Shown: piece after piece, positions 11,514-48,934 of the stretch
How the letters are laid out: every line of letters begins with the position of its first letter
How positions within the stretch are numbered: the first letter of the stretch is position 1
Virus record (IMG/VR): IMGVR_UViG_3300007513_000001
Span: 62,001-126,000 of that record
DNA: 64,000 nucleotides
Strand: one strand, 5' to 3'
Made by a program: the position numbers and the translations under genes
The notes under the pieces: generated by a model
The model's database searches: none
Seen by the model: the letters and a program-made list of their open reading frames with translations, nothing else
What the model was told of the DNA's origin: nothing

Positions 11514-11516
11514 ATT

Positions 11517-13444: not shown

Positions 13445-13477
13445 GAACTAATCCTTAAGATCATATTTATGTTAACA

Positions 13478-13506
13478 AACATAATATTCGGTTTGAAATA
13501 TGTACA
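13478..13506 (-). promoter_or_regulatory. Sigma70-like promoter candidate for the minus-strand sigma-region-4 gene
   Basis: Minus strand reads TGTACA-N17-TATGTT, ~33 nt before the ATG. Confidence 0.4.
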
Positions 13507-13518
13507 GAGGAATATTGC

Positions 13519-14808: not shown

Positions 14809-14837
14809 GTGAGATAGTTATAACTAGGGAAAATTAA

Positions 14838-23651: not shown

Positions 23652-23659
23652 ATTTTATA

Positions 23660-33726: not shown

Positions 33727-34484
33727 CTGTGGATCAATTAAAAAAAATTAATTGCGGAATTCTTTTTAACGCTAAAGAAAATAATTTTTCTGAATATTTG
33801 TCTTGGCTCAATGATTATGCTTTAGAAAATAAAGACGTAGACTTAAAAATATTCACCAACGATATTTCTTTTGTGGAGAAACATTTTCTGATAGAAAAAT
33901 CTCAAATATTAGATTCCTTTAATGAAATTTTAGATTTTTCTGATTTGCTAATTTCTTTGGGTTTTTGGAAGATAATAAAGAAAGAAAACATAGAAAAAGT
34001 TCCTTTGGGAATAGTAAATTTTCATCATTCTTATAGACTAAAATATAGGGGAAGGCATTGTTCTACTTGGGTTTTAAAAAATAATGAAACGCACCATGGA
34101 AGTACGATGCATTACTTAGATGAAAATTTAGATCAAGGCAAAATTATAGATTCAAAAAAATTTAAAATTAGTTGCGATGATGTAGCAGAAGATCTTTTTG
34201 AAAAAGCAAATGATGCTGGATTGCAAATCCTAAAAGAAAATTTTGGTTTATTAATACGGGGAAAAGTTGACAATAAAATAAACTTAAGTGAAAAACAACA
34301 TCTTTATAAGAAAAATGATTTAAGGCACGAAATATCTAATAGTTTCATAAATCATGAAAATGACCTTTTAAGAGAGATAAGGTCACTTACGTTTAGCAAT
34401 AAGCCCTCTCCATACATAATGCTTAACAACAAAAAAGTGTATCTAAAGTTAGAAGATTATGACTCAGGAATTTTAGGAAAATAA
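33717..34484 (+). CDS. Sugar N-formyltransferase (Fmt-like fold)
   Basis: NFHHS...RG, GSTMHYLDENLDQGKI. Confidence 0.8.
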   Translation: MRVAVDQLKKINCGILFNAKENNFSEYLSWLNDYALENKDVDLKIFTNDISFVEKHFLIEKSQILDSFNEILDFSDLLISLGFWKIIKKENIEKVPLGIVNFHHSYRLKYRGRHCSTWVLKNNETHHGSTMHYLDENLDQGKIIDSKKFKISCDDVAEDLFEKANDAGLQILKENFGLLIRGKVDNKINLSEKQHLYKKNDLRHEISNSFINHENDLLREIRSLTFSNKPSPYIMLNNKKVYLKLEDYDSGILGK

Positions 34485-34487
34485 ATA

Positions 34488-35177
34488 ATGAATTTTAAAA
34501 AGAGCAATCCATTTAGTCTAAAATACTATAAAGAGATTATTGGTGGAGCTAAAAAAGCCGGGTATGAGTTTTGCACAGTTTCTGAATTTTATCAAAAGGG
34601 GTGTCCTAGCAAAAAACATTTTATTCTTAGACATGATATAGACATTGTGCCAAACTCAGTTCAACAAATGATAGATATCGAGAATGATGAAAAAGTTAAG
34701 GCTACTTATTACGTAAGAGTTTTTGGTTCTCCGTATAACCCGTTTGATTACAATATATTCAACTGCTTAAAAGTTGCGGAATCTCAAGGCCATGAAATCG
34801 GTCTCCACACAAATCCAGTAGAGTTTGCCGAAATAAATGGAATAAATCCTATTGATGTAGTAATAACAGAGTACAACGTTTTAAAAAGCCAATTTAACGT
34901 AAAGAGCATATCAACACATAGAGATTTAAACTACATGTATAATTCTTTACCGTGGCTAGAAGAAAATTGGGAAAAAATTAAAACCGCAACAAAGCTAGAG
35001 TGCCAAGCTTACGACGCTGCAATTTTTGAGAATTCTGTGTACGTTAATGAAGGATTAAATCCTCATATTTGCTGGAGAAACCATCGGCCAGAAGATGTTA
35101 TAAAGACTGACGAATCAATTTATATGCTAACGCATAATCACTGGTGGTACAACAAGCATCCGTTTGAGATAAGGTAG
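34488..35177 (+). CDS. Polysaccharide deacetylase-like (NodB fold) protein
   Basis: ILRHDID, KATYY, GHEIGLH, LTHNHWW. Confidence 0.7.
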   Translation: MNFKKSNPFSLKYYKEIIGGAKKAGYEFCTVSEFYQKGCPSKKHFILRHDIDIVPNSVQQMIDIENDEKVKATYYVRVFGSPYNPFDYNIFNCLKVAESQGHEIGLHTNPVEFAEINGINPIDVVITEYNVLKSQFNVKSISTHRDLNYMYNSLPWLEENWEKIKTATKLECQAYDAAIFENSVYVNEGLNPHICWRNHRPEDVIKTDESIYMLTHNHWWYNKHPFEIR

Positions 35178-35179
35178 TT

Positions 35180-35860
35180 ATGGCATTAGAAAAAGAAAAA
35201 AAAGATGTGATCATATTTTGTGGATATCGCTCTTGGGCAGAAAGTATTTTCACAGAGCTAAAAGAAAAATACAGTAGCTTTAATTGGTATTCTGCAAATA
35301 AGCCAGATCAACTAGAAAATTTATTGCAAATAAAAGAAGTAAAGCTCGTAATACTTGCGGGGTGGAGTTGGATTATTTCAAAAGATGTGGTTGAAAAAAA
35401 CTTTATAGTAGGATTGCACCCTTCAGATTTGCCCAATTATGCGGGTGGATCTCCAATACAAAATCAAGTTTTAGATGGAATAGAAAATACCAAAATGTCT
35501 TTATTTAAAGTAAGCCCTAAAATAGATAAAGGAGAAATTTTATATAAGTCTAACCTTAGTTTGTCTGGCGGCATGGAAGACATTTTTAAAAATTTAGCTT
35601 CTTCTAGTTTGCAAGTCTTAGATCTCATGTTTGCAGATTACCCGAACATAAAGCTTCACTCGCAAGTTGGAGAGGGTAAAAGCTGCAGAAGACTTAAGCC
35701 AAAAGATAGTAAGATTGATTTTAAATTTAGCGAAATGACAGCAAAAGAAATGTATGACTTTATAAGATGTAGAGAAGATCCATACCCCAATGTTTATCTA
35801 GAAGATGAAACAGGAATATTATATTTTAAAAAAGTAGACTTTGTAGAAAAAAGGAATTAA
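35180..35860 (+). CDS. Second formyltransferase-like protein
   Basis: LAGWSWII, GLHPSDLPNYAGGSPIQNQ, DKGEI, DPYPN. Confidence 0.82.
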   Translation: MALEKEKKDVIIFCGYRSWAESIFTELKEKYSSFNWYSANKPDQLENLLQIKEVKLVILAGWSWIISKDVVEKNFIVGLHPSDLPNYAGGSPIQNQVLDGIENTKMSLFKVSPKIDKGEILYKSNLSLSGGMEDIFKNLASSSLQVLDLMFADYPNIKLHSQVGEGKSCRRLKPKDSKIDFKFSEMTAKEMYDFIRCREDPYPNVYLEDETGILYFKKVDFVEKRN

Positions 35861-35862
35861 AA

Positions 35863-36606
35863 ATGAAAACATGCTTAGTAGTTCCGTTTTATTTCGGCGC
35901 AAGAAGAATACGTTCTGGGCACCAAACATTTAAATGCGCTAAAGACGTAATTGATCTTGCTAGAGTGTGTTTTGAAAAATACACCGCTTGGGATTCTGGC
36001 TGCGATACAGATATAATCTTTGTTAATAATTCTCCGGAAGTAGAAGAATCTGCAGAATTTTTAAAAAAAATAAATGGTTCTAAAGTAAAAAACGGAAAAT
36101 TAATTGTAATAGAAGGCAATAATATTGGCATGGGCTTCGGCGCTCATAGTTTAGCTTATGACACTTTCAGAGATGATTACGATTATTGGATGTTTACAGA
36201 AGACGATACTATTATCACTAAGAAAAATTTAATGAAGATCGCGATAGACCAACTTAGGTCTAGTTCTAAAATAGGGTTTATCGCTTGTTATGGCTTAGCG
36301 GGAAATCATGCCCACGGAGGAATAGGTTGTACCTCTAGAGAAAACTTAGAAAAAGTATGGAAAGTTCACGGAAAGTTACCTCACCACGAATCTATACCAG
36401 ATCTTACTGATAATGTAAAATTTAAAAATACTCATATAATCCATGGAGAAATAGCTTTTACTAAATGTTATGTTGACTTGGGCATGAAGATAGAAAAAGT
36501 AGCTAGTGATGGTGTTCCCTTTTGCAGGTGGGATAAAGATGAGTCGCCTTATAACGATAAAAGAGACAAAAAAAATTGGGGAGAGATAGCGCAGTGTTTG
36601 AAGTAA
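35863..36606 (+). CDS. Putative GT-A glycosyltransferase-like protein
   Basis: IIFVNN, FTEDD (DxD-like); island context. Confidence 0.5.
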   Translation: MKTCLVVPFYFGARRIRSGHQTFKCAKDVIDLARVCFEKYTAWDSGCDTDIIFVNNSPEVEESAEFLKKINGSKVKNGKLIVIEGNNIGMGFGAHSLAYDTFRDDYDYWMFTEDDTIITKKNLMKIAIDQLRSSSKIGFIACYGLAGNHAHGGIGCTSRENLEKVWKVHGKLPHHESIPDLTDNVKFKNTHIIHGEIAFTKCYVDLGMKIEKVASDGVPFCRWDKDESPYNDKRDKKNWGEIAQCLK

Positions 36607-37337
36607 ATAACAAAAAATTGCTAAGCGAGGGCTACATTGTTTTAGACAAATTTTTAACTGTAGAAGAATGTAGAAAGATTGAAGAAGAATTTTTAAATTT
36701 ATTAGAGACAATTGATATTTCTAAAACTGCTAATCATCCTAAGCTTAAAGTGGCTAACCATACAAAAACTAGAGAAGTTTCGGGAAATTTAGGAAATCTT
36801 TCTATGCCAGTCTTGCTCATTAGAGGCCATAACGGCTTTGATGATAATATGATAGAGCTTTTTAAAGCAGAAAAGTTGATTAATTTACCCGTAGAAAAAA
36901 TAAAGGCAGCAATTTCTTCTGCTGGCTTTTATGATTGCCGTTTAAGTTTTTCTTTATATTACAACGATAGTATTTCTAACACTCGAGGTTACCACCGCGA
37001 CGCCTCTCCATTGCCGCATCCCTTATATCCACGCGAAACTAAAAAGCTATATAAGTTTTTTATGTATGTAACCGACGTTTTTTCTATAGACCAGGGACCA
37101 TATTCTTATATTTCTAATACGCACTCGTGGGAAGGAAGTTTAAAAATTGCAGATCAGTTTAATGGGTCATATCTTAAACCTGGTGAAAAAGAAGAGCACG
37201 ATATAGATTTAGATCCTAAAATATTTTTAGGAAAAGCTGGCCTTGCTTTAATATCTGATCAAGCTGGATTCCATCGGGGGCTCCCACAAAGCAAGGGGTC
37301 TAAAAGAATTATGCTGGTATGTAAAATAAGGAGTTAA
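36576..37337 (+). CDS. 2OG-Fe(II) oxygenase (PhyH-like)
   Basis: EGYIVL, YHRDA (HxD), GPYSY, GFHRG (distal His), R-x-x-L strand. Confidence 0.78.
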   Translation: MGRDSAVFEVNNKKLLSEGYIVLDKFLTVEECRKIEEEFLNLLETIDISKTANHPKLKVANHTKTREVSGNLGNLSMPVLLIRGHNGFDDNMIELFKAEKLINLPVEKIKAAISSAGFYDCRLSFSLYYNDSISNTRGYHRDASPLPHPLYPRETKKLYKFFMYVTDVFSIDQGPYSYISNTHSWEGSLKIADQFNGSYLKPGEKEEHDIDLDPKIFLGKAGLALISDQAGFHRGLPQSKGSKRIMLVCKIRS

Positions 37338-37346
37338 GGAAAGACA

Positions 37347-38330
37347 ATGGGCGAGAAAATAAAATTTGAGCAAGTTCCAATCGATAAAATAGCTCTCGAC
37401 ATAAGAGACGATATTAATTTAAGAACTTATGTATTGCTAAATCGCGCTGGACATATTTGGAAGCATTTTCTAAGGGGCGCTAATGAGTACAACATTCGTC
37501 CAAGGACTTACGAAAAGTTTCTAGAGCTTTATCAAGACATTAGAGTAAACGGAATAAAAGATCCAATAAAAGCTCAGAAGATTAATGGGAGATTTTATTT
37601 AGAAGACGGCGCTCATCGGCTTGCTGCCGCTCGAGCGCTGGGAATGAAATTTATTGATGTAGAAATAGTAACTAATTGCGGAATACCTTCTGTGTTTGTG
37701 GCAAAACCAAAAACTGTAGAAATACCATTTCCGATAGATCAAAATAATCCAAGAATCTTAAAAATATTCAAGTATATTGATAGCGATATTATAGAAAAAT
37801 TTGCTGACTTAGAGCTTTCTACTGATACTGAAAAAGAGCCAATGAAAGGAGCTTCAGTTTTTTGGCCCATGTGCTACGATCACTGGCCAGCCATGCTAGA
37901 AGAATTAAAAAAATTCCATAATGTAACTAAAAAAATAGAAATTACATGTGGCTCAAGAGATGTACTGCATGAGATGATAGTCGACTTTTACAAATCAGAC
38001 GATGTAGCTCCTTGGAAGGTGGAAGCTAAATTTCCATATTGTGATAATGCTCCTATGAAATTTTTAGTTTTAGAATTTGATATTGAAGATGCTAGGCACA
38101 GAATTAAAAGAAAAACTGGAAATGAAATTTCTATGGCAATAGAAGATTTAAAAAGTTATATAAGAAAAACTTTTCGTCCAATTGTTGCGAATTATCCTGC
38201 TAATGGTCAACCAGACCTTATCATTCACGCTGGAGACAACGAATATCAAACTTCAGAAATATTGAAAACTGTAATAAGGTTTAAAGATAATCAATCTGTA
38301 GAAATAAAAGATTTAACTGCGAGTGAATAA
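37347..38330 (+). CDS. ParB/Srx-like N-terminal domain fused to an uncharacterised C-terminal domain
   Basis: IRVNGIKDPI...YLEDGAHRLAAARALG; C-terminal IIHAGDN is weakly NDK-like. Confidence 0.7.
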   Translation: MGEKIKFEQVPIDKIALDIRDDINLRTYVLLNRAGHIWKHFLRGANEYNIRPRTYEKFLELYQDIRVNGIKDPIKAQKINGRFYLEDGAHRLAAARALGMKFIDVEIVTNCGIPSVFVAKPKTVEIPFPIDQNNPRILKIFKYIDSDIIEKFADLELSTDTEKEPMKGASVFWPMCYDHWPAMLEELKKFHNVTKKIEITCGSRDVLHEMIVDFYKSDDVAPWKVEAKFPYCDNAPMKFLVLEFDIEDARHRIKRKTGNEISMAIEDLKSYIRKTFRPIVANYPANGQPDLIIHAGDNEYQTSEILKTVIRFKDNQSVEIKDLTASE

Positions 38331-38955
38331 AACCATGTTTTTAGATTTAGTCGGCTTTTTTAATTCGATAAAAAACCTTAGATATTTTGCCACAAAAATT
38401 GAAACACCGTTTTTTAATGATCATTTTCCAGAAGATTATCCAGTTGGAAGAGATGTAGATCTTATTTGCCATCCCGAAGACTTTAGTCGTATATGTTGTT
38501 TATGTGAAGAGTTCATTCAACCAAAAGAGCCATTTTTACGAAGAATAGCCAAAGACACGCCAAAGCATTTTAGATATCGTATTGAATCTGCGAATTACTT
38601 TGTGAGACCAAACCCCAGCTCATACGACAAACTTATCCACGGTTTACCCATGACCAAACTACATTTTCAAGTTGATATATCGGCAATATCTGAAAAAGAA
38701 TACAGCTGTTTTTCAGATAATTTTATTAGTTCTATATTTGATGACTTGGATACTAAAAACGGAATCAATATTTTAGACAAAGATAGGGAGTCTACATTTC
38801 GGTTAATGTTTTGGAAAAAATCTCCAGCCGCAGTTCACCATTCAGATTATATTAGCAAAAATTTTGATAGAGAAATTTTGATGAATTTTAGAGATGGAGA
38901 AATAAAAGAATTTGCTAAAAACATTTTAGAGAGACTGGAAAAAGAAAGTGCGTAA
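38323..38955 (+). CDS. Hypothetical protein, possibly nucleotidyltransferase-fold
   Basis: GRDVDLIC (G-x-D-x-D) and a third acidic strand in QVDI. Confidence 0.45.
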   Translation: MNKTMFLDLVGFFNSIKNLRYFATKIETPFFNDHFPEDYPVGRDVDLICHPEDFSRICCLCEEFIQPKEPFLRRIAKDTPKHFRYRIESANYFVRPNPSSYDKLIHGLPMTKLHFQVDISAISEKEYSCFSDNFISSIFDDLDTKNGINILDKDRESTFRLMFWKKSPAAVHHSDYISKNFDREILMNFRDGEIKEFAKNILERLEKESA

Positions 38956-39574
38956 AGTAGTTTTAGTTGGCAACTCTGGAGAAGCCCTTAATTCTAGGGC
39001 TGGAACTAGTATCGATTCGTCAGATGTAGTAATTAGAATGAACGATTTTGCAGTTTATGGATATGAAGCTTTTGTTGGTTCTAAGACTGATGTAGTTGTC
39101 TGCGCTTTTAGTGGAGATAATAAAATATGCGATATCAAAAACTACCCAAGCTACCCAACTAGAGACTTAGCTAAAAATAGTACAGTGTGGAGCGCTAGAT
39201 TTTTCGAACATCAGCATGATCCTCGAGGCCCGCAAAGAAGAAAGCTTTGCGAAGATCTTCTCGGTCATTCTAACGTAAGACAGCCAACTTTAGACCAGTG
39301 GAATAGAGCGCTAAATAATGCGTATTCTAATTTTTGGAGAAAGCAACCCTCTACTGGGTTAATGGCTATAGAAATGTCACTAGAAAAATATGAGGGTGAA
39401 GAGATATATCTTTATGGTTTTGATTTTAATGTTGAAAAAACTCATTATTTTGATAAAGATTATCTAGATAAAGATTATCCTGGCGATCGATGCGGTCATA
39501 ATTGGGAAGGAGAGTCGTTGTATATTCAACGTTTAATAAACCAAGGAAAAATAAAACTCCTAAAAGGTGTTTAA
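38948..39574 (+). CDS. GT29 (eukaryote-type) sialyltransferase family
   Basis: Sialylmotif L (VVLVGNSG...IDSSDVVIRMN...VGSKTD), motif S (PSTGL...LYGFDF), motif III (HYFD), motif VS (HNW.GE). Confidence 0.82.
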   Translation: MRKVVLVGNSGEALNSRAGTSIDSSDVVIRMNDFAVYGYEAFVGSKTDVVVCAFSGDNKICDIKNYPSYPTRDLAKNSTVWSARFFEHQHDPRGPQRRKLCEDLLGHSNVRQPTLDQWNRALNNAYSNFWRKQPSTGLMAIEMSLEKYEGEEIYLYGFDFNVEKTHYFDKDYLDKDYPGDRCGHNWEGESLYIQRLINQGKIKLLKGV

Positions 39575-40222
39575 ATGTATTGGATAGTCATTCCTGCTCG
39601 CCGCGGATCTAAAGGTCTTCCCTTTAAAAATAGAAAATTATTCAGGTTCACATCAGGCATAGTACCTTCTGATCGTTTGTCAAACACTATAGTGACATCA
39701 GATGATGAAATAATTTTAGAAGGTGCTGTTAATGCAGGTTTCTTAAGCCACAAAAGAGACAAGTCGCTTGCAAAAGACGAGACTTCGGTTCGCGAAGTTT
39801 TAAAAGACGTCATATCTAAATTTAATATTCCAGCCAATGATACTATAATCATGCTGTATTTAACATACCCGCAGAGAACTTGGTTTGATGTTTCTAGAGC
39901 CATATCGTTTTATGAAATTTCTAATGGTAAATCCCTTCTTTGTCGAAAAGAATTAGAAAGTTCTCCATATCTTTGTTTTTATGAAGAACATGAATGGAAG
40001 GGGACGAAAATAATAGAACATGATTTCTGCCGTCGCCAAGATTATAGAGTTTGTTTTGAAGCATCTCATTTTATAGCGATGATGGAAGTCTCTAAAATTA
40101 ATGAACTAGATACAAATCTATATTGTAAAGATACAATATTCTTACCAATAGATTCTTGTATAGACGTTGACGAAGAAAAAGATTTAAGGAAATATTTTAA
40201 TGAAAACCAAGATAATAGCTGA
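39575..40222 (+). CDS. neuA: CMP-nonulosonic acid synthetase (acylneuraminate cytidylyltransferase)
   Basis: IPARRGSKGLPFKN, TSDD, LTYPQR, RRQD, IDVDEEKD. Confidence 0.88.
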   Translation: MYWIVIPARRGSKGLPFKNRKLFRFTSGIVPSDRLSNTIVTSDDEIILEGAVNAGFLSHKRDKSLAKDETSVREVLKDVISKFNIPANDTIIMLYLTYPQRTWFDVSRAISFYEISNGKSLLCRKELESSPYLCFYEEHEWKGTKIIEHDFCRRQDYRVCFEASHFIAMMEVSKINELDTNLYCKDTIFLPIDSCIDVDEEKDLRKYFNENQDNS

Positions 40223-41021
40223 AATTGGGATTAATCATAATGGTGATATTGATATTGCAAAAAGGTTAATAGACATAGCGGTGGTAGCAGGGTGCGACTA
40301 TGCAAAGTTTCAAAAAAGAACTCCAGATATATGCGTACCAGAAGCTCAAAAAAATAAAATGAGAAACACCCCATGGGGTGAAATGAAATATATTGACTAT
40401 AAGAAGAAGATTGAATTTGAAAAAGAAGAATATGAAGAACTTTATGATTATGTTAAAGACAAGCCCATTGAGTTATTTTCTTCTGTTTGGGACAAGCCTT
40501 CTGTAGACTTTATGTCAAACTACACAAATGTTACAAAAATCGGATCAGCTCTAATTACCGACCTAGAATTATGCAGATATGCCAGAGATAATTCAAAGAC
40601 GCTTATTGTATCTACCGGGATGAGTACAGAAGAAGAAATTGATGCTTGCATTGCTGCATGCAGCCCCGATGTTATAATGCACACAAATTCGACTTATCCA
40701 TCTCCTGTTGACGAATTAAACTTAAATTATATCAATTGGCTATCTAATAAATGGCCTGGTGTAGATATCGGTTATAGCGGTCATGAATTTGGTTTGGTTA
40801 CCACCTTTGCCGCAGTCGCAATGGGAGCTACTTGGATAGAGCGCCACATAACACTCGACCGAGTTATGTGGGGAAGCGACCAACTTTCTTCTGTAGAACC
40901 AGGAGGATTAATTAAGCTTGTAAAAGGAATTAGAGATATTGAAAAATCTTTTGGCAAGAGTGGTCCAAGAAAACCTCTCGGTTCCGAGCTAGAAAAGAGA
41001 AAAAGCTTGAGGGGTATATAG
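40200..41021 (+). CDS. neuB: Nonulosonic acid synthase, short form without a C-terminal SAF/AFP domain
   Basis: IAEIGINHNGD, KFQKR, STGMS, MHTNSTYP, GYSGHE, ERHITLDR. Confidence 0.92.
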   Translation: MKTKIIAEIGINHNGDIDIAKRLIDIAVVAGCDYAKFQKRTPDICVPEAQKNKMRNTPWGEMKYIDYKKKIEFEKEEYEELYDYVKDKPIELFSSVWDKPSVDFMSNYTNVTKIGSALITDLELCRYARDNSKTLIVSTGMSTEEEIDACIAACSPDVIMHTNSTYPSPVDELNLNYINWLSNKWPGVDIGYSGHEFGLVTTFAAVAMGATWIERHITLDRVMWGSDQLSSVEPGGLIKLVKGIRDIEKSFGKSGPRKPLGSELEKRKSLRGI

Positions 41022-41735
41022 ATGAATTATGTTTTCGATATAGACGGCACTATATGCAGAGTCTCTGGAACCGATTATAGTACTGCTTCTCCTTTAGAAG
41101 AAAGAATAGAATACATAAATGATTTGTATGATTCTGGAAACAATATAACATATATGACCGCAAGAGGAATGGGTAGGCATAATGGAAATAGAGAAAAAGC
41201 ATGCAGTCAATTTTACGAATTTACTAAAAATCAATTAGCGTCTTGGGGAGCAAAACACCACCGACTTTTGTTGGGAAAACCAGCGGCCGATATTTACGTT
41301 GATGACAAAGGAATGTTAGATAAAGATTTTTTTAGCGGAATAAAGAAAAATAAAAATTCTGCTAGATTTTTGCCAAGAAAAACTAACTTAGAGATGAACC
41401 ATGTAGAAAAAGGATGGGGCTGGGAACGCTGGATATGTAATGGCCCAGAATATTGCGGCAAACTTCTTTTTTTTAATAAGGGAAAAATGTGTTCTTGGCA
41501 TCGTCATGCTCTCAAAGACGAAGTGTTTTATCTACAGTCTGGAAAGATGCTAGTAAAATATTCAGAGCAAGATGATATTTCTAAAGCCGAAGAGCTTATA
41601 CTAAACCCAGGTGACAATTTTCACGTTTATAGAGGTCTTCGGCATAGGATGATAGCCCTAGAAGATTCAGAGTTGTTCGAATTTTCAACTCAGCACTTTG
41701 ACACAGACAGCTATAGAATTATAAAGGGCGATTAA
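41022..41735 (+). CDS. HAD phosphatase fused to a cupin (sugar-phosphate isomerase-like)
   Basis: FDIDGTI and GKPAADIYVDDK (HAD); VEKGWG.E.WI, SWHRH..KDE.F, HRM (cupin). Confidence 0.82.
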   Translation: MNYVFDIDGTICRVSGTDYSTASPLEERIEYINDLYDSGNNITYMTARGMGRHNGNREKACSQFYEFTKNQLASWGAKHHRLLLGKPAADIYVDDKGMLDKDFFSGIKKNKNSARFLPRKTNLEMNHVEKGWGWERWICNGPEYCGKLLFFNKGKMCSWHRHALKDEVFYLQSGKMLVKYSEQDDISKAEELILNPGDNFHVYRGLRHRMIALEDSELFEFSTQHFDTDSYRIIKGD

Positions 41736-42770
41736 ATGAGAGTACTAGTTACAGGTTCTGGGGGCTTAATAGGTAGCGAAGCTGCTGAATATTTTTTAAA
41801 AAAGCAGAATGTTACAGTGAAGGGCGTTGACAACAATATGCGGATGGTTTTCTTTGGTCCGGGCGGAGATGTAAGCTCTACAATTTTAAGACTTTCAGCT
41901 TATAAAAATTATAGCCACACAAATATTGACATAACAAATAAGCTGGCTGTCGATGAAGCTATTTCATCATTTCAGCCCGATCTTTTGATTCATTGTGCAG
42001 CACAACCCAGCCATGACAAGGCTGCAGATATTCCGCATTTAGATTTTGAAGTTAACGCAAATGGAACATTAAATCTTTTAGAATCTTTTCGAAACCACTG
42101 TAGCGAATCTTCAGTTTTTATACACGTGAGCACTAATAAAGTGTATGGAGACGGGCCTAACTATCTTGATTTAACAGAGGGGCAAACTCGATATGATTTT
42201 GCTGATGAAAAATATAAAAACGGCATCGCTGAAGATTTTTCTATAGATAGTTGTCTGCATTCTCTTTTCGGGGCCTCTAAGGTCGCTGGAGATATCTTGG
42301 CGCAAGAGTATGGTAGATACTTTGGCTTGAACGTTGGAGTCTTCAGAGGCGGCTGTCTAACCGGACCGCAACATGCTGGGGTAGAGCTGCATGGTTTTCT
42401 TTCTTACATCATAAAGTGCGCAAAATCTGGTAATCCATATACTATTTTTGGCTATAAAGGAAAACAGGTTAGAGACCAAATTCACTGTTACGATGTGGTA
42501 AGAGTTTTTGAAGAGTTTGCCGCAGATCCTAAAAAGGGAGAAGTATACAATCTCGGTGGAGGCGTGCACAATAGCGCGTCTGTATTAGAAGTGATAAGTT
42601 TAATACAAGAAATTTCTGGATACGAATTGAATTATTCGCACTCTAGTGAAGCAAGAATTGGTGATCACATATGTTACTACACCGATATGTCTAAATTTAA
42701 ATCTCACTATCCTTCTTGGAGCATGAAATATAGCTTGAATGCGATAATAGAGGAAATGATAAATGGATAA
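41736..42770 (+). CDS. NAD-dependent epimerase/dehydratase (CDP-paratose 2-epimerase-like SDR)
   Basis: TGSGGLIG, AAQPSHD, STNKVYG, SLFGASK, QVRDQIH, GDHICY. Confidence 0.85.
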   Translation: MRVLVTGSGGLIGSEAAEYFLKKQNVTVKGVDNNMRMVFFGPGGDVSSTILRLSAYKNYSHTNIDITNKLAVDEAISSFQPDLLIHCAAQPSHDKAADIPHLDFEVNANGTLNLLESFRNHCSESSVFIHVSTNKVYGDGPNYLDLTEGQTRYDFADEKYKNGIAEDFSIDSCLHSLFGASKVAGDILAQEYGRYFGLNVGVFRGGCLTGPQHAGVELHGFLSYIIKCAKSGNPYTIFGYKGKQVRDQIHCYDVVRVFEEFAADPKKGEVYNLGGGVHNSASVLEVISLIQEISGYELNYSHSSEARIGDHICYYTDMSKFKSHYPSWSMKYSLNAIIEEMING

Positions 42771-43521
42771 AAACGTTCTATCTCCTGCGCATATTTCTTC
42801 TATCAAGAGAATGTTAGGTGTGGATGAATCTTTTCGAGACCACGATAAGAAGAAAAAGCCGATTAAAAGAAAAACTACCAAGCCATTAGTATGCGGTCCA
42901 GACTATCTAGAGTATCTTACAAAAAATCTAGTGTCTCCAGCAGGGGTTCGCTCTCCATATGAAGTTCCACATGTGGTAAAAAATTTAATCAAAGATAAAG
43001 TGGTGGTAGATCTCGGATGCGGATCAGGAGATCTATCTTTTGGATTTTCGAAATATGCAAAAATGGTGTATGGTATTGAAATATCGTCGAAAGTCAGGAG
43101 TAATCCAAGATGCGATAAAATAAAAAACATAAAATTGTATAAAAAACAAAATTTTTGGGAAGCGATAGAAGAAAAGGAGCTTTATGCAGACGGCGACGTA
43201 TATTATGTTTGGGGTTTCGCGCACTGTCCTCTTGGGGGCCGTAAAATAAACTTTCAAGAAAAAAAATTCCTGACAGCTAAGCATATTAAAGAAAATTTTC
43301 CCAAAGTTGTAGATAATGAAAATAGAATAATTTTAAGTTTTGCAAATATGTCAGATGTTTCTACCTGGCCATTCGATCAAATAATACCTTTTAAAACACG
43401 CGAACGTCCGATAAAGAAAATCAGACTGTTTGGAGAAGACTGGCAAAATCTATGCATAACAGTTTTAAGGTTTGATAATCCCGCAATAGAAAGTTTAGCC
43501 ACTCTTCGAACAAGAAGATAA
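42763..43521 (+). CDS. Class I SAM-dependent methyltransferase-like protein
   Basis: VVVDLGCGSG, VYGIE. Confidence 0.7.
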   Translation: MDKNVLSPAHISSIKRMLGVDESFRDHDKKKKPIKRKTTKPLVCGPDYLEYLTKNLVSPAGVRSPYEVPHVVKNLIKDKVVVDLGCGSGDLSFGFSKYAKMVYGIEISSKVRSNPRCDKIKNIKLYKKQNFWEAIEEKELYADGDVYYVWGFAHCPLGGRKINFQEKKFLTAKHIKENFPKVVDNENRIILSFANMSDVSTWPFDQIIPFKTRERPIKKIRLFGEDWQNLCITVLRFDNPAIESLATLRTRR

Positions 43522-43538
43522 AAAGTTTTAACTCGAGC

Positions 43539-43567
43539 TTGTTCATGAATATGTTTTTTAATAAAAT
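43539..43567 (+). promoter_or_regulatory. Sigma70-like promoter candidate
   Basis: TTGTTC-N17-TAAAAT in the intergenic gap before the GT2 gene at 43586. Confidence 0.45.
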
Positions 43568-43585
43568 TATACAACTGAGAGAAAC

Positions 43586-44608
43586 ATGACCGATTTACCG
43601 AAAGTGTCCGTTGGATTCGTTAATTGCAACAGGCTTCACTATCTTAAAAGCTGCGTAGAATCTTTTCTTTATTGTACTCAAGATTACCCAAATAAAGAAT
43701 TGATAATTGTAGATAATAATTCTGTTGAAGAAGGCACAGAAGAATATTTGAAAGAAAAAGAAGGCCAAGGGTTCATTGTTTTTAGGAGCGAACATAGAGA
43801 TCCTTCTAACGAGTTTGCTAGAGGTCTAAACAAGATAGTAGAAAACTCTACGGGAGATTACGTAATCTTACTCCAGGGCGATATGCAGTTTATATTAAAG
43901 GGCGGCTGGCTAAAAGATTACGTCGAGCTAGCTATTCAATACGGCCCGCAAGTTGGATGCATATCTCTTGACGCGCAAAGAAGAGTTACACACGATTCTC
44001 ATAAATTAACAGAACCAGTCTCTGTAAACGATTATTCTTTCGTTGCCGATTTAGATAGGCCTCCTGTCGCTGGCGCGGCAGATGCTTTCTTTTCTAGAGA
44101 AGTGTTAAGAGAAATGTATCCTTGGGAAATAAGAAATAGTAGTCACGAAGGTTCTGATGACTCTGAAACAAAAATGCTACAAAAAGCTGCCGCGCTAGTT
44201 TACCGCAGAAAGCTAAAGTGGAAAACTATTATGCCTATATTTCCGCCGGCTGCTGCCATATACACAGATTCTCGAGGAACCAACGCTAGAGTAAGGGGTA
44301 ATCGTAGATACGGCGATTATTGGCCGGCAAAATCAGATTTTAGATACTATGAAATATTAGATTATGAAAAATTGATTCAAGATAAAACCGCAACAGGAGG
44401 CCGCCCTTGGAGTATAGAAGAAGTAGTAAAAACTATAGGATTTAATGCGCCTATAGACGAACATGGTTCTTGGTTAAAAAATCCAATACGTCCTGACACA
44501 GCCTTGCCTGGAGAATGGGTAGAGCTAAATTATTTTGACTATTCAAACACAGAACCACTCACTACTAGTGAAGAAGATAAATTTTTAGAAGACTGGCTAA
44601 ACAGTTAA
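43586..44608 (+). CDS. GT2 family glycosyltransferase
   Basis: LIIVDNNSVEEGT, GLNKIV, LQGD. Confidence 0.8.
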   Translation: MTDLPKVSVGFVNCNRLHYLKSCVESFLYCTQDYPNKELIIVDNNSVEEGTEEYLKEKEGQGFIVFRSEHRDPSNEFARGLNKIVENSTGDYVILLQGDMQFILKGGWLKDYVELAIQYGPQVGCISLDAQRRVTHDSHKLTEPVSVNDYSFVADLDRPPVAGAADAFFSREVLREMYPWEIRNSSHEGSDDSETKMLQKAAALVYRRKLKWKTIMPIFPPAAAIYTDSRGTNARVRGNRRYGDYWPAKSDFRYYEILDYEKLIQDKTATGGRPWSIEEVVKTIGFNAPIDEHGSWLKNPIRPDTALPGEWVELNYFDYSNTEPLTTSEEDKFLEDWLNS

Positions 44609-44620
44609 ATTGGAGTTATA

Positions 44621-46258
44621 ATGAAAATAGCGGGACTTTGGTCGGGTCACGACTGTTCTTTTTGCGTTTTAGAAGATGGGAAACCTTTAATTCACGCTGA
44701 ATATGAACGCTACAATAGAGAAAAATCCCCGCCGGGAGATTCTTCTAACTTTATGTTTGACAGGTATCCAGAGTGGCCTGCTATAACTCATTTTGCTTCT
44801 GTATATCCAAAGAAAAAACTAACGGAAAGAGAAGAATCTTATAGTTTATTAAAAAACCACATAGACGCCAATGGTGGAAAGCTATATTTTTGCTCACATC
44901 ATAAAGCTCACGCAGCAAACGCTTTTTATTCTAGTAATTTTGAGAAATCTATAATCGTCACTTTAGATGGTGGTGGTGTAGAAGACGACCGCGGTGGAGA
45001 GTCTGCATGTACGATCTGGAGGGGTGATGGAACAGAATTGAAGCATCTAAAGACCTTTCGGCCTAACGAGATTAATATCGGAGGTGTGTGGACACGAGTA
45101 ACAAGGTATGTATTTAAGCTTCAGAACGGGTGGCCAAGAGGAGGCCAAGAGGGTTCTGTAATGGCCATGGCTGCTTTTGGTGATGCATCTATCTGGGCTC
45201 AAGACTGCTGGAATTGGTTAACCAAAGACAAGATGTCTGCTGGGTTTAAGCCTCCAAACCAACCAGTTGGAGCAACTTCAGACCGTGATCCACCCCACCC
45301 TTATTTAGAACCGTGGGCCGCTCATGCTAGAGAGTCAGAGCAAAATAGATTTGATATAGCTGCTGGTTTGCAAGAAGCGACCGAAGCTCTTATAAGACAA
45401 ATAATAGAATATGCGCTAAGCTTTGATAGCGATATAGATTCAATTTGTTTAGCTGGTGGTGTCACTTTAAATTCTGTTGCCATGGGAAAATTATTGAAGT
45501 GGTTCCCGCAATTAAAGAGAGTCTATATACCCCCTGTACCTTATGACGGTGGATTGTGTATAGGAGCGGCACAGGCTCTGTGGCACGAAGAGCTTGGAAA
45601 TCCGAGAATTAAATGGGAGCATAATTTTACTCCATATTTAGGAGAAACTTGGACTGAAGAACATTTTAATGAAGTTTTAGAAAATAGAAAAAATGACATA
45701 GAAGTTTTAGAATCAAGCGTAGAAGATATAGTTTCAAAGCTTCAAGAGGGAAATATAGTGTCGGTATTCAACGGCTCGTCTGAATCTGGCCGGCGAGCTC
45801 TTGGAAATAGAAGCATATTAGTAGATCCAAGATCAACGACAATGAAAGATACTATCAATGAAAAGGTCAAGCATCGGCAATGGTATCGCCCTTTTGCTCC
45901 CTCTATATTAGAGTCTGAAGCCTCAGATTGGTTCGAAGAATATCAAGAGAGTCCGTACATGCAGTTTGTTTTAAAATTTAAAAAAGAAAAAGTTGATTTA
46001 GTACCAGCTGTGGTTCATTTAGATGGAACAGCAAGACTACAAACGGTTAGAGAGACTGATAATAAGTGGTACTATGATTTTTTGCAAGCTTGGCATAAGG
46101 CATCTGGAGTACCAATCATACTTAACACAAGCTTCAATGATAGAGAGCCCATTTGCGAAAATGTTGAGCATGCTCTAAACTGCTTTTTAGGAACCAACAT
46201 TGACTATCTTTATTTTCCAGAATATAAGAAGCTCATAAAACGAAAAGGTGCAGAGTAA
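44621..46258 (+). CDS. Carbamoyltransferase (NodU/CmcH family)
   Basis: GHD, HHKAHAANAF, TLDGGG, LAGGVTLNS, GRRALGNRSIL, KHRQWYRPFAP, LNTSFN. Confidence 0.93.
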   Translation: MKIAGLWSGHDCSFCVLEDGKPLIHAEYERYNREKSPPGDSSNFMFDRYPEWPAITHFASVYPKKKLTEREESYSLLKNHIDANGGKLYFCSHHKAHAANAFYSSNFEKSIIVTLDGGGVEDDRGGESACTIWRGDGTELKHLKTFRPNEINIGGVWTRVTRYVFKLQNGWPRGGQEGSVMAMAAFGDASIWAQDCWNWLTKDKMSAGFKPPNQPVGATSDRDPPHPYLEPWAAHARESEQNRFDIAAGLQEATEALIRQIIEYALSFDSDIDSICLAGGVTLNSVAMGKLLKWFPQLKRVYIPPVPYDGGLCIGAAQALWHEELGNPRIKWEHNFTPYLGETWTEEHFNEVLENRKNDIEVLESSVEDIVSKLQEGNIVSVFNGSSESGRRALGNRSILVDPRSTTMKDTINEKVKHRQWYRPFAPSILESEASDWFEEYQESPYMQFVLKFKKEKVDLVPAVVHLDGTARLQTVRETDNKWYYDFLQAWHKASGVPIILNTSFNDREPICENVEHALNCFLGTNIDYLYFPEYKKLIKRKGAE

Positions 46259-47109
46259 TGCAGACAACTATTGGAATTCTGGGCCAAGGGTTTGTCGGGT
46301 CTTCTGTGAAGCTAGGATTAGAAAAAGCTTATAAAATAGAAACTTACGATCTAATACCTGAAAAAGCCACGGTTGAATCTATCGGTGAGCTAGTTTGGAA
46401 ATCAGATGTTTTGTTTGTTTGTTTGCCTACCCCAATGAGAAAAGACGGAAGTTGCGACACTAGAATTATTGAATCCGCGCTGAAAGAAATAAACAATTGC
46501 TTATTAGAAATAAATAAAAGCAAGTTGGTAATCACGAAATCTACGGTCCCGCCTCAGACTCACTCAGGCTGGAGCAGCGAATATAGAAATTTAAACCTTG
46601 TTTTCAATCCAGAGTTTCTTACTGAAGCCAATGCCGCAGAAGATTTTAAGAATCAAAATAGAATAGTACTTGGTGGCCATCCATCCGATTGTGAAAAAGC
46701 TCAAAAAGTATTTCAAAAAGTATTTCCAAATATAAGTTATTTTACCACAACATACGTAACTGCAGAACTTGTGAAATATTTCATAAACTGCTTCTTAGCT
46801 GCAAAAGTCTCATTTGCTAATGAATTCTATCAACTATGTGAATCTTTAAATGCAGATTATTCTAGAGTGGTGTCTGGAGCTCTTTTGGATAAAAGAATAG
46901 GAACATCACATCTTCAGGTCCCTGGCCCAGATGGTGATTTTGGTTTCGGCGGCCACTGTTTTCCAAAAGACCTTAATGCTATGATTTATATGGCTAAAAA
47001 ACTAGACATTGATCCCAAAGTTCTTAAAGCGGCTAAACTAAAAAATTCAGAAGTTAGAAATAATAAAGACTGGGAATCTATGAAAGGGCGAGCCGTTAGT
47101 GAAGATTAA
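46258..47109 (+). CDS. UDP-glucose/GDP-mannose 6-dehydrogenase family (short form)
   Basis: GQGFVG, VCLPTP, KSTVPP, FNPEFL, GFGGHCFPKD. Confidence 0.9.
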   Translation: MQTTIGILGQGFVGSSVKLGLEKAYKIETYDLIPEKATVESIGELVWKSDVLFVCLPTPMRKDGSCDTRIIESALKEINNCLLEINKSKLVITKSTVPPQTHSGWSSEYRNLNLVFNPEFLTEANAAEDFKNQNRIVLGGHPSDCEKAQKVFQKVFPNISYFTTTYVTAELVKYFINCFLAAKVSFANEFYQLCESLNADYSRVVSGALLDKRIGTSHLQVPGPDGDFGFGGHCFPKDLNAMIYMAKKLDIDPKVLKAAKLKNSEVRNNKDWESMKGRAVSED

Positions 47110-47983: not shown

Positions 47984-48009
47984 ACAATTGCCATGTTTTT
48001 GTTTATGAT
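47981..48009 (+). promoter_or_regulatory. Sigma70-like promoter candidate
   Basis: TGAACA-N17-TATGAT directly upstream of the nuclease gene. Confidence 0.4.
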
Positions 48010-48017
48010 TTTATATA

Positions 48018-48839: not shown

Positions 48840-48862
48840 CAGTTTAAAAAATTAAAGTTTCT

Positions 48863-48897
48863 AAGGGCCATTTTTTACCGTTTGGCCCTTTTTTATT
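48863..48897 (+). terminator. Rho-independent terminator
   Basis: Stem AAGGGCCA (48863-70) / TGGCCCTT (48883-90), 12-nt loop, followed by TTTTATT. Confidence 0.7.
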
Positions 48898-48902
48898 AAA
48901 AT
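48874..48902 (+). promoter_or_regulatory. Sigma70-like promoter candidate overlapping the terminator
   Basis: TTTACC-N17-TAAAAT, 32 nt before ATG 48935. Confidence 0.45.
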
Positions 48903-48934
48903 GAATTAGTTCGAAGGGAGAGGTTAATTTCGAA

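What the first reader, a model, noticed from the sequence alone, without database searches (positions are those of the whole stretch)
38948..41735. Self-contained sialylation cassette: GT29, NeuA, short NeuB and HAD phosphatase
Seen: four consecutive genes, with GT29 showing L, S, III and VS sialylmotifs. Established: GT29 is the mainly eukaryotic sialyltransferase family, while most bacteria use other families. A synthase plus HAD phosphatase fits the 9-phosphate route (KDN-9-P or Neu5Ac-9-P) used by animals and Bacteroides. Inference: the phage makes and transfers KDN or another nonulosonic acid onto its particle or host, which would be unusual for a bacteriophage.
Basis: partly seen in the sequence, partly recalled or inferred. 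Interest (0 to 1): 0.66.

Follow-up and report, generated by a model that had tools for sequence, protein, structure and literature searches.

The report
Phage sialic-acid-type sugar cassette
A complete 293-kb marine jumbo phage carries a tightly packed set of genes to make, activate and transfer a sialic-acid-like nine-carbon sugar with an animal-type (GT29) transferase; related cassettes occur in many uncultured marine viruses, and I found no paper describing them.

Summary
Window 38948-41735 has four abutting or overlapping + strand genes:
- a minimal soluble GT29 (Pfam 78 bits; four sialylmotifs; AF2 model matches only sialyltransferases);
- a divergent CMP-nonulosonate synthetase;
- a NeuB synthase without the SAF domain;

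The cassette is not self-contained. It lies in a ~30-kb island (20049-51345) of about 35 proteins, none with a predicted membrane segment.

The 9-phosphate idea gains comparative support. In 36 dereplicated IMG/VR clusters with this short NeuB, the same small HAD family abuts or overlaps NeuB in 15 and lies within 10 kb in 14 more. It was found in none of 16 cellular NeuB loci.

There is a complication. The window's HAD-cupin belongs to the subtype that elsewhere sits with an HldE-like kinase/nucleotidyltransferase (NDP-heptose type). That module is also in this island, without an isomerase or phosphatase of its own, and the genome has only one such HAD. It probably serves both routes.

The sugar (KDN is the simplest reading) and the acceptor are untested. 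GT29 plus NeuB also occurs unannotated in a published huge phage (LR756508.1) and in 8 of the 36 viral clusters.

Verdict: a new variant of a known pathway.

The parts
38948..39574 (+). Minimal soluble GT29 sialyltransferase-like glycosyltransferase (208 aa). It has no N-terminal membrane anchor or stem and lacks the conserved Cys pair of the L and S motifs.
   Evidence: PF00777 78 bits; motifs read in the translation; ST3Gal-I at E 1.5e-8; AF2 pLDDT 94.4, with all significant PDB hits being sialyltransferases; no TM-like segment.
39575..40222 (+). Divergent CMP-nonulosonate synthetase (NeuA/PseF-like cytidylyltransferase, 215 aa).
   Evidence: PF02348 21.6 bits (cut-off 22.6) and TIGR03584 38 bits over residues 5-204; PDB CMP-Neu5Ac synthetases 6ifd at 3.4e-6 and 1eyr at 1.3e-4; IPARRGSKGLPFKN and IDVD motifs; a NeuA homologue lies next to NeuB in 25 of 36 viral clusters.
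40200..41021 (+). NeuB-family nonulosonate synthase without the C-terminal SAF/antifreeze-like domain (273 aa).
   Evidence: PF03102 216 bits; TIGR03569 matched only to position 274 of 329; best PDB match is the 290-aa 6ncs; more than 120 metagenomic clusters of 271-287 aa at 70-89% identity; it is the only NeuB in the genome.
41022..41345 (+). Small cap-less HAD phosphatase domain (residues 1-~108 of the 237-aa fusion), TIGR01689/phrog_1238 type, with motifs I-IV intact.
   Evidence: TIGR01689 33 bits; PDB 9iqw at 5.5e-12 and 1xpj; invariant D8, K86, D90, D95; phrog_1238 at 1.7e-28; it is the only HAD of this family in the 293-kb genome.
41394..41735 (+). Metal-binding cupin domain (residues ~125-237 of the fusion), probably a sugar-phosphate aldose-ketose isomerase.
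   Evidence: Cupin_2 33.9 bits and weak D-lyxose isomerase; invariant H160, H162, E167, H208; Foldseek finds D-lyxose/mannose isomerases, KdgF and T. kodakarensis phosphomannose isomerase (TM 0.81 by target); phrog_7851 at 2e-55.
26396..29321 (+). NDP-heptose-type module: GT9 heptosyltransferase (26396-27253), HldD-like SDR (27250-28209), HldE-C-like nucleotidyltransferase (28190-28582) and PfkB kinase (28536-29321). It has no isomerase or phosphatase of its own and is the likely second client of the HAD-cupin.
   Evidence: Pfam hits; no SIS/GmhA and no other HAD in the genome; in L006, L007 and L009 the HAD-cupin directly follows this module.
20049..51345 (+). About 30-kb co-directional glycan-biosynthesis island of ~35 proteins with no predicted membrane segment. 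It holds GT2, GT4, GT9 and GT29 transferases, sugar dehydratases/epimerases, an aminotransferase, two formyltransferases, a methyltransferase, a carbamoyltransferase and a UDP-glucose-dehydrogenase-like protein. No flippase, polymerase or initiating phosphoglycosyltransferase was found.
   Evidence: Pfam/NCBIfam scans; hydropathy scan without TM-like segments apart from a Rossmann N-terminus.
37347..38955 (+). Two unknown ORFs (327 aa with a ParB/Srx-like N-domain; 210 aa). They are coupled to the GT29 start and conserved in the related phage contig L002. Function unknown.
   Evidence: No homologue in the other NeuB loci.
41736..46258 (+). Downstream genes kept in synteny with the cassette in L002: an SDR dehydratase/epimerase (41736-42770), a methyltransferase (42763-43521), a GT2 (43586-44608) and a NodU-like carbamoyltransferase (44621-46258). 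They are candidate modifiers of the glycan.

Best explanation
The block is a working module for nonulosonic (sialic-acid-type) sugar synthesis, activation and transfer in a marine jumbo phage.

Proposed route:
1. An aldose-6-phosphate is the substrate. Mannose-6-phosphate is the simplest candidate, taken from the host or made from fructose-6-phosphate by the cupin domain.
2. The SAF-less NeuB condenses it with PEP to a nonulosonate-9-phosphate (KDN-9-P).
3. The HAD domain removes the phosphate.
4. The NeuA-like enzyme makes the CMP-sugar.
5. The minimal cytosolic GT29 transfers it to an acceptor built by the other soluble transferases of the 30-kb island.

The acceptor is most likely a virion protein or another cytoplasm-facing acceptor, because the island encodes no export or polymerisation machinery.

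The HAD-cupin gene is of the subtype that in other viruses completes an HldE-like kinase/nucleotidyltransferase (NDP-heptose) route as its isomerase and phosphatase. This genome has that route too, but only one such HAD. The fusion is therefore probably shared between the two pathways.

Shown: gene identities, folds, synteny and co-occurrence statistics. Inferred: substrate, sugar identity, dual use and acceptor.
For: Gene identities.

Operon-like packing. The same order appears in independent contigs L002/L003 and in L141.

NeuB-HAD pairing:
- 42 of 50 IMG/VR NeuB loci have the HAD within 10 kb.
- After dereplication, 15 of 36 clusters have it abutting or overlapping NeuB and 14 more have it within 10 kb.
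- It is also present in LR756508.1, a Kyanoviridae single-cell virus, L013, L014 and L008.
- It is absent from 16 of 16 cellular loci, whose NeuB is at most 49% identical.
- In the nearest NeuB relatives (L101, L107, L109) the order is NeuA-NeuB-HAD, which is the slot the fusion occupies here.

No nucleotide-sugar hydrolase that could release a free hexose was found in the complete genome: no NeuC/LegG and no PseG.

Fusion proteins elsewhere join this HAD type to GT29 domains (P0138) and this cupin to GT29 (P0234).

Six cupin loci carry NeuB/NeuA without HldE nearby; five of them also have the HAD.

The HAD motifs and cupin metal ligands are intact. The cupin fold resembles mannose/lyxose and phosphomannose isomerases.

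Dual use: the genome has GT9, HldD-like, HldE-C-like and PfkB genes but no SIS isomerase and no second HAD.

Soluble-only island.
Against: - The window's HAD domain nests in the HldE/cupin-associated clade (49 members, support 0.71). It has a median 54% identity to those HADs against 44% to NeuB-adjacent HADs.
- 61 of 80 cupin loci carry HldE-like genes and only 9 carry NeuB. Cyanophages with the cupin, the HAD and the kinase have no NeuB at all. The fusion could therefore belong to the heptose route alone.
- The cupin is rarely near NeuB (4 of 36 clusters), so it is not a general part of the route.
- The island also encodes a PseB/CapD-like dehydratase, a DegT aminotransferase and two formyltransferases. 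These could supply a diamino sugar.
- The HAD is not of the families known to act on KDN-9-P or Neu5Ac-9-P.
- No phosphate-binding feature of NeuB could be tested.
- NeuA is just below the Pfam cut-off.
- There are no expression or biochemical data (one search found no RNA holder).
Confidence: 0.55

Rival explanations
1. The HAD-cupin belongs only to the NDP-heptose route, as the analogue of GmhB phosphatase plus GmhA isomerase for the HldE-like, HldD-like and GT9 genes at 26396-29321. It merely lies next to NeuB. NeuB then uses an unphosphorylated hexose: a 2,4-diamino-2,4,6-trideoxyhexose made by the island's PseB-like, DegT and formyltransferase genes, or a host intermediate. The product would be a legionaminic/pseudaminic-type, possibly N-formylated, nonulosonate that NeuA and GT29 then use.
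For: - HAD-cupin directly follows PfkB and HldE-C in L006, L007 and L009.
- 61 of 80 cupin loci have HldE-like genes.
- The window HAD sits in that clade.
- Cyanophages have this set without NeuB.
- The genome lacks GmhA and other HADs.
- A PseB-like gene, DegT and two formyltransferases lie at 31565-35860.
- DegT lies beside NeuB in L012 and L008.
Against: - The NeuB-HAD pairing across viral lineages shows that this NeuB clade normally works with a phosphatase of this family.
- No NDP-sugar hydrolase (NeuC/LegG/PseG) is in the complete genome.
- The related phage L002 keeps the cassette but has no PseB-like gene or formyltransferases.
- DegT and PseB-like homologues accompany NeuB in only 11 of 50 loci.
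Confidence: 0.27
2. The cassette makes a different ulosonic acid by the same logic, and the GT29-like enzyme transfers that instead. One case is an 8-carbon Kdo-like acid from arabinose-5-phosphate (cupin as ribulose-5-P isomerase, HAD as KdsC analogue, NeuA as KdsB analogue). Another is a 10-carbon acid from heptose-7-phosphate.
For: - The order isomerase, synthase, phosphatase, cytidylyltransferase, transferase maps one-to-one onto the CMP-Kdo pathway (own knowledge).
- NeuA and KdsB share Pfam PF02348.
- The missing SAF domain removes the part that closes over the hexose in N. meningitidis NeuB (PMC8208679).
- The same cupin and HAD handle a heptose-type route elsewhere.
Against: - To my knowledge no NeuB-family enzyme is known to make Kdo-8-P or 10-carbon acids.
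- NeuB scores best against the Neu5Ac-synthase model (213 bits).
- All structural matches of the transferase are sialyltransferases.
Confidence: 0.08
3. The genes act on the host envelope rather than the virion. During infection the phage sialylates host LPS core or capsule intermediates at the inner face of the membrane, for example to block superinfection. The biosynthetic route is the same; only the acceptor differs.
For: - GT9 heptosyltransferases normally act on the LPS inner core (own knowledge).
- Bacterial GT29s occur in marine Gram-negative bacteria whose LPS carries ulosonic acids (PMC5811610).
Against: - No flippase, ligase, polymerase or lipid-carrier transferase, and no membrane segment, in ~35 island proteins.
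- The island abuts baseplate and large structural-type genes.
Confidence: 0.3

Closest known systems
Animal sialylation pathway (Neu5Ac-9-P/KDN-9-P synthase NANS, phosphatase NANP, CMP-sialate synthetase, Golgi GT29 sialyltransferases)
   Same: The order of steps is the same: synthase on a 6-phosphorylated hexose, HAD phosphatase, cytidylyltransferase, GT29 transferase. The GT29 sialylmotifs and fold match.
   Different: The phage GT29 is a 208-aa soluble core without membrane anchor, stem or the L/S-motif cysteine pair. NeuB lacks the SAF domain that NANS keeps. The HAD is a cap-less TIGR01689-type domain, not NANP. All of this is cytoplasmic and in a bacteriophage.
Bacteroides thetaiotaomicron KDN route (KDN-9-P synthase plus KDN-9-P phosphatase of the KdsC/YrbI HAD type; own knowledge)
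   Same: It is a prokaryotic NeuB-family synthase paired with a small HAD phosphatase, implying a phosphorylated substrate.
   Different: The HAD gave no hit to the KdsC/YrbI or GmhB models. Here it is fused to a cupin, the NeuB has no SAF domain, and the transferase is GT29.
Bacterial GT29 sialyltransferase-like proteins of marine alpha-, gamma- and epsilon-proteobacteria (Petit et al. 2018, PMC5811610)
   Same: These are prokaryote-context GT29s with sialylmotifs from a marine habitat.
   Different: They are cellular and were not described with NeuB-HAD cassettes. The window's close GT29 clade is tiny (8 clusters at 53-85% identity). I could not place it against labelled bacterial or eukaryotic sequences.
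Uncultured huge phage LR756508.1 (484 kb, GenBank, unannotated)
   Same: It carries GT29, a SAF-less NeuB (51% identical) and the small HAD in one cluster.
   Different: It has four GT29 paralogues, a GIY-YIG endonuclease inserted after NeuB, and neighbouring GDP-mannose dehydratase/GDP-fucose-synthase-like genes. I saw no NeuA in the stretch scanned. The GT29s are only ~28% identical to the window's.
ADP-heptose pathway (GmhA, HldE, GmhB, HldD, GT9 heptosyltransferase; own knowledge)
   Same: The island has GT9, HldD-like, HldE-C-like and PfkB genes. In other viruses the HAD-cupin sits directly after them and supplies the two missing activities, isomerase and phosphatase.
   Different: The isomerase would be a cupin instead of a SIS protein. 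The phosphatase is TIGR01689-type instead of GmhB. Here the gene sits 12 kb away, beside NeuB.
SAF-less NeuB of environmental bacteria (PMC8208679) and the 290-aa PDB entry 6ncs
   Same: It is a TIM-barrel NeuB domain only, with the catalytic motifs kept.
   Different: The substrate of the SAF-less forms is unknown. The window's clade has no cellular genome representative above 49% identity, and it is paired with the small HAD only in viruses.

Membership tests
CAZy GT29 / Pfam PF00777 | Match to the family profile above the curated cut-off | tested here: met
   78 bits against a cut-off of 23, E 1e-21, profile positions 56-271 of 272; 81.3 bits in the genome scan.
CAZy GT29 / Pfam PF00777 | Sialylmotifs L, S, III and VS with the catalytic His of VS | tested here: met
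   Read in the translation. H184 and E189 (VS), H166/Y167 (III), and G8, N9, R30 (L) are invariant or nearly invariant in alignments A1 and A4.
CAZy GT29 / Pfam PF00777 | Sialyltransferase (GT-A variant) fold | tested here: met
   AF2 pLDDT 94.4, pTM 0.92. The top PDB matches are ST8SiaIII, ST3Gal-I, ST6GalNAc2 and ST6Gal1, followed by GT42 Cst-I/II. There are no other folds among the 46 significant hits.
CAZy GT29 / Pfam PF00777 | Type II membrane topology and the L/S-motif disulfide typical of eukaryotic members | tested here: not met
   The protein starts 2 residues before motif L. It has no TM-like segment. The Cys positions are V and E/I. This is a feature of eukaryotic members, not of the catalytic family.
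CAZy GT29 / Pfam PF00777 | Transfer from a CMP-activated ulosonic acid | not testable with these tools
   Needs an enzyme assay.
NeuB nonulosonate synthases (PF03102) | Profile match and catalytic motifs of the TIM barrel | tested here: met
   216 bits. AEIGINHNG, KFQ, KIGS, STGMS, NSTYP, GYSGHE and IERHITLD are present.
NeuB nonulosonate synthases (PF03102) | C-terminal SAF domain with the Arg that reaches into the partner's active site | tested here: not met
   The protein ends at TIGR03569 position 274 of 329. No separate SAF ORF was seen beside it.
N-acetylneuraminate synthase equivalog TIGR03569 | Score above the equivalog cut-off | tested here: not met
   213 bits against a cut-off of 399.65. 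PseI scores 163 against 340. The product cannot be named from these models.
CMP-nonulosonate synthetases (PF02348) | Profile match above the cut-off | tested here: inconclusive
   21.6 bits against a cut-off of 22.6. Supported by TIGR03584 over the full length (38 bits), PDB CMP-Neu5Ac synthetases and the P-loop motif.
Known nonulosonate-9-P phosphatases (KdsC/YrbI-type KDN9PP; NANP) and GmhB | Match to those HAD subfamilies | tested here: not met
   Only TIGR01689 (33 bits, cut-off 162) and a faint HAD-IIIA hit were found. There was no GmhB or KdsC/YrbI model hit at E<=1.
HAD phosphatase superfamily | Catalytic motifs I-IV | tested here: met
   DIDGT (D6, D8), TARG (T46), GKP (K86) and DD (D94, D95) are conserved in the fusion family. 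The model shows a Rossmann-like domain at high confidence.
Cupin-type phosphomannose / aldose-ketose isomerases | Cupin metal site plus similarity to PMI or lyxose isomerases | tested here: inconclusive
   The metal ligands are conserved. Cupin_2 scores 33.9 bits and D-lyxose isomerase only E 0.006. Foldseek finds lyxose/mannose isomerases and T. kodakarensis PMI, but also KdgF, oxalate decarboxylase and dioxygenases.

The most novel reading that the evidence does not exclude
Marine phages carry a virus-specific pathway for a sialic-acid-type sugar that is widespread but undescribed in the papers I searched. It is built from a SAF-less NeuB and a TIGR01689-type mini-HAD phosphatase, often with a minimal cytosolic GT29. 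It is used to decorate virions in the bacterial cytoplasm. In this jumbo phage a single HAD-cupin fusion acts as isomerase and phosphatase for two different sugar routes, NDP-heptose and CMP-nonulosonate.
Probability: 0.3. Interest if true: 0.8.

Novelty: new variant of a known kind. Interest (0 to 1): 0.68.

Why it matters
Sialic-acid-type sugars are best known as animal cell-surface caps and as mimicry tools of a few pathogens, and GT29 is the animal/eukaryotic transferase family.

If true, this finding has four consequences:
- It would extend virus-encoded glycosylation, known from giant viruses and some mycobacteriophages, to nonulosonic acids in phages.
- It would give a new, very small soluble GT29 and a SAF-less synthase for enzymology and chemoenzymatic synthesis.
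- It would assign a function to a HAD family and a cupin family that phage databases label misleadingly ('phosphoheptose isomerase', 'cysteine dioxygenase').
- It bears on the debated bacterial or eukaryotic origin of GT29, since phages could move it between lineages.

It also suggests that acidic sugar coats may influence phage-host recognition or virion stability in the ocean.

Tried and rejected
- Pattern-based searches for GT29 relatives gave nothing usable. As a result I could not place the phage GT29 against taxonomically labelled bacterial or eukaryotic sequences.
Metagenome contigs L002, L006 and L008 could not be searched whole.
- From precomputed Pfam labels I first concluded that the NeuA-NeuB loci L013 and L014 lack a HAD. 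A custom HMM reversed this: the small 'unknown' ORFs there are the HAD.
- The unknown 327-aa and 210-aa ORFs upstream of GT29 stayed unassigned. They show no similarity to the similarly sized neighbours of NeuB in L008, L012, L013 or L014. The Atlas look-ups returned only hypothetical clusters. Only a ParB/Srx-like N-domain is seen. A possible small-molecule kinase role is speculation.
- The 227-aa gene of L008 and the 241-aa gene of L013 beside NeuA/NeuB are not demonstrably GT29.
- Literature searches for PDB 9iqw and for phage-encoded GT29 or NeuB found no description of such a cassette. This covers open-access papers only.
- The contigs of the HAD-GT29 and cupin-GT29 fusion proteins were too short to give context.
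- I considered a canonical Neu5Ac route through NeuC and rejected it as phage-encoded, because there is no Epimerase_2 in the genome. A host-supplied precursor cannot be excluded.
- No complex prediction was run, because no binding claim is made.

Full report
WHAT IS THERE

The window is bases 62001-126000 of a 293,409-bp IMG/VR virus record with direct terminal repeats, rated complete. Three things mark it as a jumbo phage: its helicase is related to those of Bacillus phage G, XacN1 and uncultured huge phages, it has a baseplate wedge gene, and it encodes a tmRNA. The stretch occurs without differences in marine and seawater metagenomes of at least two studies.

At 38948-41735 there are four + strand ORFs that abut or overlap each other and their neighbours.
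- ORF1 (208 aa) is a GT29. PF00777 scores 78 bits against a cut-off of 23. Sialylmotifs L, S, III and VS are readable in the translation. ST3Gal-I matches at E 1.5e-8. The AF2 model (pLDDT 94.4, pTM 0.92) has 46 significant PDB matches, all sialyltransferases. It is a bare catalytic core with no anchor, no stem and no L/S cysteine pair.
- ORF2 (215 aa) is a divergent CMP-nonulosonate synthetase.
- ORF3 (273 aa) is a NeuB TIM barrel with its catalytic motifs but no SAF domain.
An N-terminal cap-less HAD has intact motifs I-IV and resembles TIGR01689, PDB 9iqw and 1xpj. A C-terminal cupin has a conserved His/His/Glu/His site.

CONTEXT

The four genes are not a self-contained unit. They lie in a co-directional ~30-kb island (20049-51345). 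It encodes GT2, GT4, GT9 and GT29 transferases and an HldE-like kinase and nucleotidyltransferase with an HldD-like epimerase. It also encodes FdtA, RmlB-like and PseB/CapD-like enzymes, a DegT aminotransferase, two formyltransferases, a PhyH-like dioxygenase, a methyltransferase, a NodU-like carbamoyltransferase and short UGDH- and UXS-like proteins.

None of about 35 island proteins has a membrane-like segment, and there is no flippase, polymerase, ABC exporter or initiating phosphoglycosyltransferase.

A related phage contig (GT29 76% identical) keeps the block from the PhyH-like gene through GT29, NeuA, NeuB, HAD-cupin, SDR, methyltransferase, GT2, carbamoyltransferase, UGDH-like, UXS-like, nuclease and GT4. 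Its upstream amino-sugar genes are different, with no PseB-like gene and no formyltransferases.

IS THE HAD PART OF THE NONULOSONATE ROUTE?

This was the crux, and the evidence points two ways.

(a) Starting from the cupin, 80 IMG/VR loci were fetched out of at least 587 relatives. With custom HMMs, 61 have PfkB and/or HldE-C-like genes within 10 kb and only 9 have NeuB.
- In L006, L007 and L009 the HAD-cupin fusion directly follows GT9, (HldD), HldE-C and PfkB.
- Cyanophages Bellamy and P-TIM68 have the cupin, the small HAD, a kinase, a nucleotidyltransferase and epimerases, but no NeuB.
- This set needs exactly an isomerase and a phosphatase to make an NDP-heptose-type sugar. The window's genome has the kinase, nucleotidyltransferase, epimerase and GT9 but no SIS isomerase and no other HAD.

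(b) Starting from NeuB, 50 IMG/VR loci were fetched.
- 42 have the small HAD within 10 kb.
- Dereplicated at 95% NeuB identity (36 clusters), the HAD abuts or overlaps NeuB in 15, lies within 10 kb in 14 more, and is absent in 7, several of which are truncated loci.
- In the same 36 clusters, NeuA is present in 25, GT29 in 8, the cupin in 4, PfkB in 1 and HldE-C in 2.
- The same HAD is present in the huge phage LR756508.1, a Kyanoviridae single-cell virus, and in L008, L013 and L014.
- It is present in none of 16 loci from cellular genomes, whose NeuB is at most 49% identical.

So the SAF-less viral NeuB and this mini-HAD are a conserved pair. That is the genomic signature expected of a synthase that works on a phosphorylated sugar.

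(c) A tree of 99 HAD domains separates a mostly NeuB-adjacent group (45 sequences) from a mostly HldE/cupin-adjacent clade (49 sequences, support 0.71). The window's HAD nests in the latter. Its median identity is 54% to those HADs and 44% to the NeuB-adjacent ones.

(d) The fusion nevertheless occupies the slot right after NeuB that the NeuB-type HAD occupies in the nearest NeuB relatives (NeuA-NeuB-HAD in L101 and L109; NeuB-HAD in L107, whose locus starts at NeuB). The genome has only this one HAD. Six cupin loci have NeuB/NeuA but no HldE nearby, five of them with the HAD as well. Fusion proteins elsewhere join this HAD or this cupin to GT29 domains.

The simplest reading is one phosphatase-isomerase gene serving both the heptose-type and the nonulosonate routes in this phage.

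WHICH SUGAR?

This is not determined.
- The complete genome has no NeuC/LegG-type or PseG-type enzyme to release a free hexose from a nucleotide sugar.
- The cassette persists in L002 without the PseB-like and formyltransferase genes.
- These two points favour a sugar-phosphate substrate taken from central metabolism. Mannose-6-phosphate, which the cupin could make from fructose-6-phosphate, would give KDN.
- The cupin's structural neighbours include mannose/lyxose isomerases and a phosphomannose isomerase, but the fold is generic.
- A diamino, possibly N-formylated, nonulosonate remains a serious rival. An 8- or 10-carbon acid is a remote one.

ACCEPTOR

This is inference only. An all-soluble machinery next to structural genes suggests cytoplasmic glycosylation of virion proteins. 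The inner face of host LPS synthesis is the alternative, because of the GT9.

COMPARISON AND NOVELTY

The logic is that of the animal and Bacteroides 9-phosphate routes, and GT29 membership is solid. The differences are these:
- It is in a phage, with a cytosolic setting and a minimal GT29.
- The synthase has no SAF domain.
- The phosphatase comes from a different HAD family and is fused to a cupin.

Bacterial GT29s are already published (PMC5811610), and so are SAF-less NeuBs (PMC8208679).

PHROGs v4 has no family for the GT29, NeuA-like or NeuB proteins. It labels the HAD 'phosphoheptose isomerase' and the cupin 'cysteine dioxygenase'.

An exhaustive profile search finds 8,652 GT29-like representative clusters (1,992 at E<=1e-10), and 86 of the top 150 are short forms of 260 aa or less. 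The window's own clade, however, has only 8 close clusters.

My searches of open papers found no description of phage GT29 or of the NeuB-HAD viral module. The published huge phage LR756508.1 carries four GT29 genes, NeuB and the HAD, all unannotated.

VERDICT

This is a real feature and a new variant of a known pathway.

Noticed in passing
window 10354-10761 (+): A phage-encoded tmRNA gene with tag peptide ANNNYHFEADRLAA (ARAGORN).
   Followed up: no
L011 = LR756508.1 312000-334000, locus 8030-15193: The published 484-kb uncultured huge phage has, in order: a GDP-fucose-synthase-like gene, a GDP-mannose 4,6-dehydratase, a GT29, a SAF-less NeuB, a GIY-YIG/HTH homing-endonuclease-like gene, three more GT29 paralogues, and the small HAD. 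The record has no annotation.
   Followed up: partly
proteins P0138 (L015:1440-4244) and P0234 (L016:1662-2543): These are natural fusion proteins. P0138 is a 934-aa protein with the same mini-HAD at its N-terminus followed by two to three GT29 domains. P0234 is a 293-aa protein with the same cupin fused to a GT29 domain. Their contigs are too short to show neighbours.
   Followed up: partly
window 46258-47109 (+); also L002 and L006: A short (283-294 aa) UDP-glucose/GDP-mannose dehydrogenase-like protein has only part of the NAD domain plus the central domain and no C-terminal UDP-binding domain. It is conserved in length across related phage contigs.
   Followed up: no
window 37347-38330 (+): A 327-aa protein with a ParB/sulfiredoxin-like N-terminal domain (weak hits to ParB_N, to SbnI and to ParB-like PHROGs) sits inside a sugar operon. 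Its end overlaps the start of the 210-aa ORF that runs into the GT29 start. Some ParB/Srx-fold proteins are small-molecule kinases, so a sugar-modifying role is conceivable.
   Followed up: partly
L013:6657-7382 (+): The 241-aa unknown protein just upstream of NeuA-NeuB in a 108-kb Tara phage contig contains 'ISIIGWDY...LDHYYDES'. This resembles the end of sialylmotif S plus motif III. hhalign against the GT29 alignment is not significant.
   Followed up: partly
window 7269-8645 (+): A GroEL-like chaperonin homologue (phrog_5725, E 5e-16) in the phage.
   Followed up: no
G000:C1:234408-234866 (outside the window): A second, standalone copy of the same cupin family (about 40% identical over residues 131-223) lies elsewhere in the phage genome.
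   Followed up: no
L063, L074, L087, L089, L110 (IMG/VR GVMAG contigs); L010: The HAD-cupin fusion (40-44% identical) and a short NeuB (67% identical) also occur on contigs binned as giant-virus MAGs. L010, an ENA metagenome contig of uncertain origin, carries the fusion about 2.4 kb from a 797-aa PfkB+nucleotidyltransferase fusion, together with a protein kinase. Either the modules are shared between phages and giant viruses or some bins are mixed.
   Followed up: no
L105/L106, L108, L112-L115, L120, L125, L133, L142, L049, L060: Many viral loci carry two NeuB paralogues a few kb apart, sometimes one on each side of NeuA. This suggests two different nonulosonates or a two-step elaboration.
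   Followed up: no
window 33717-34484 and 35180-35860 (+): Two formyltransferase-domain genes flank an unknown 229-aa ORF with a faint polysaccharide-deacetylase hit, downstream of a PseB-like dehydratase and a DegT aminotransferase. This looks like a route to an N-formylated amino sugar.
   Followed up: no
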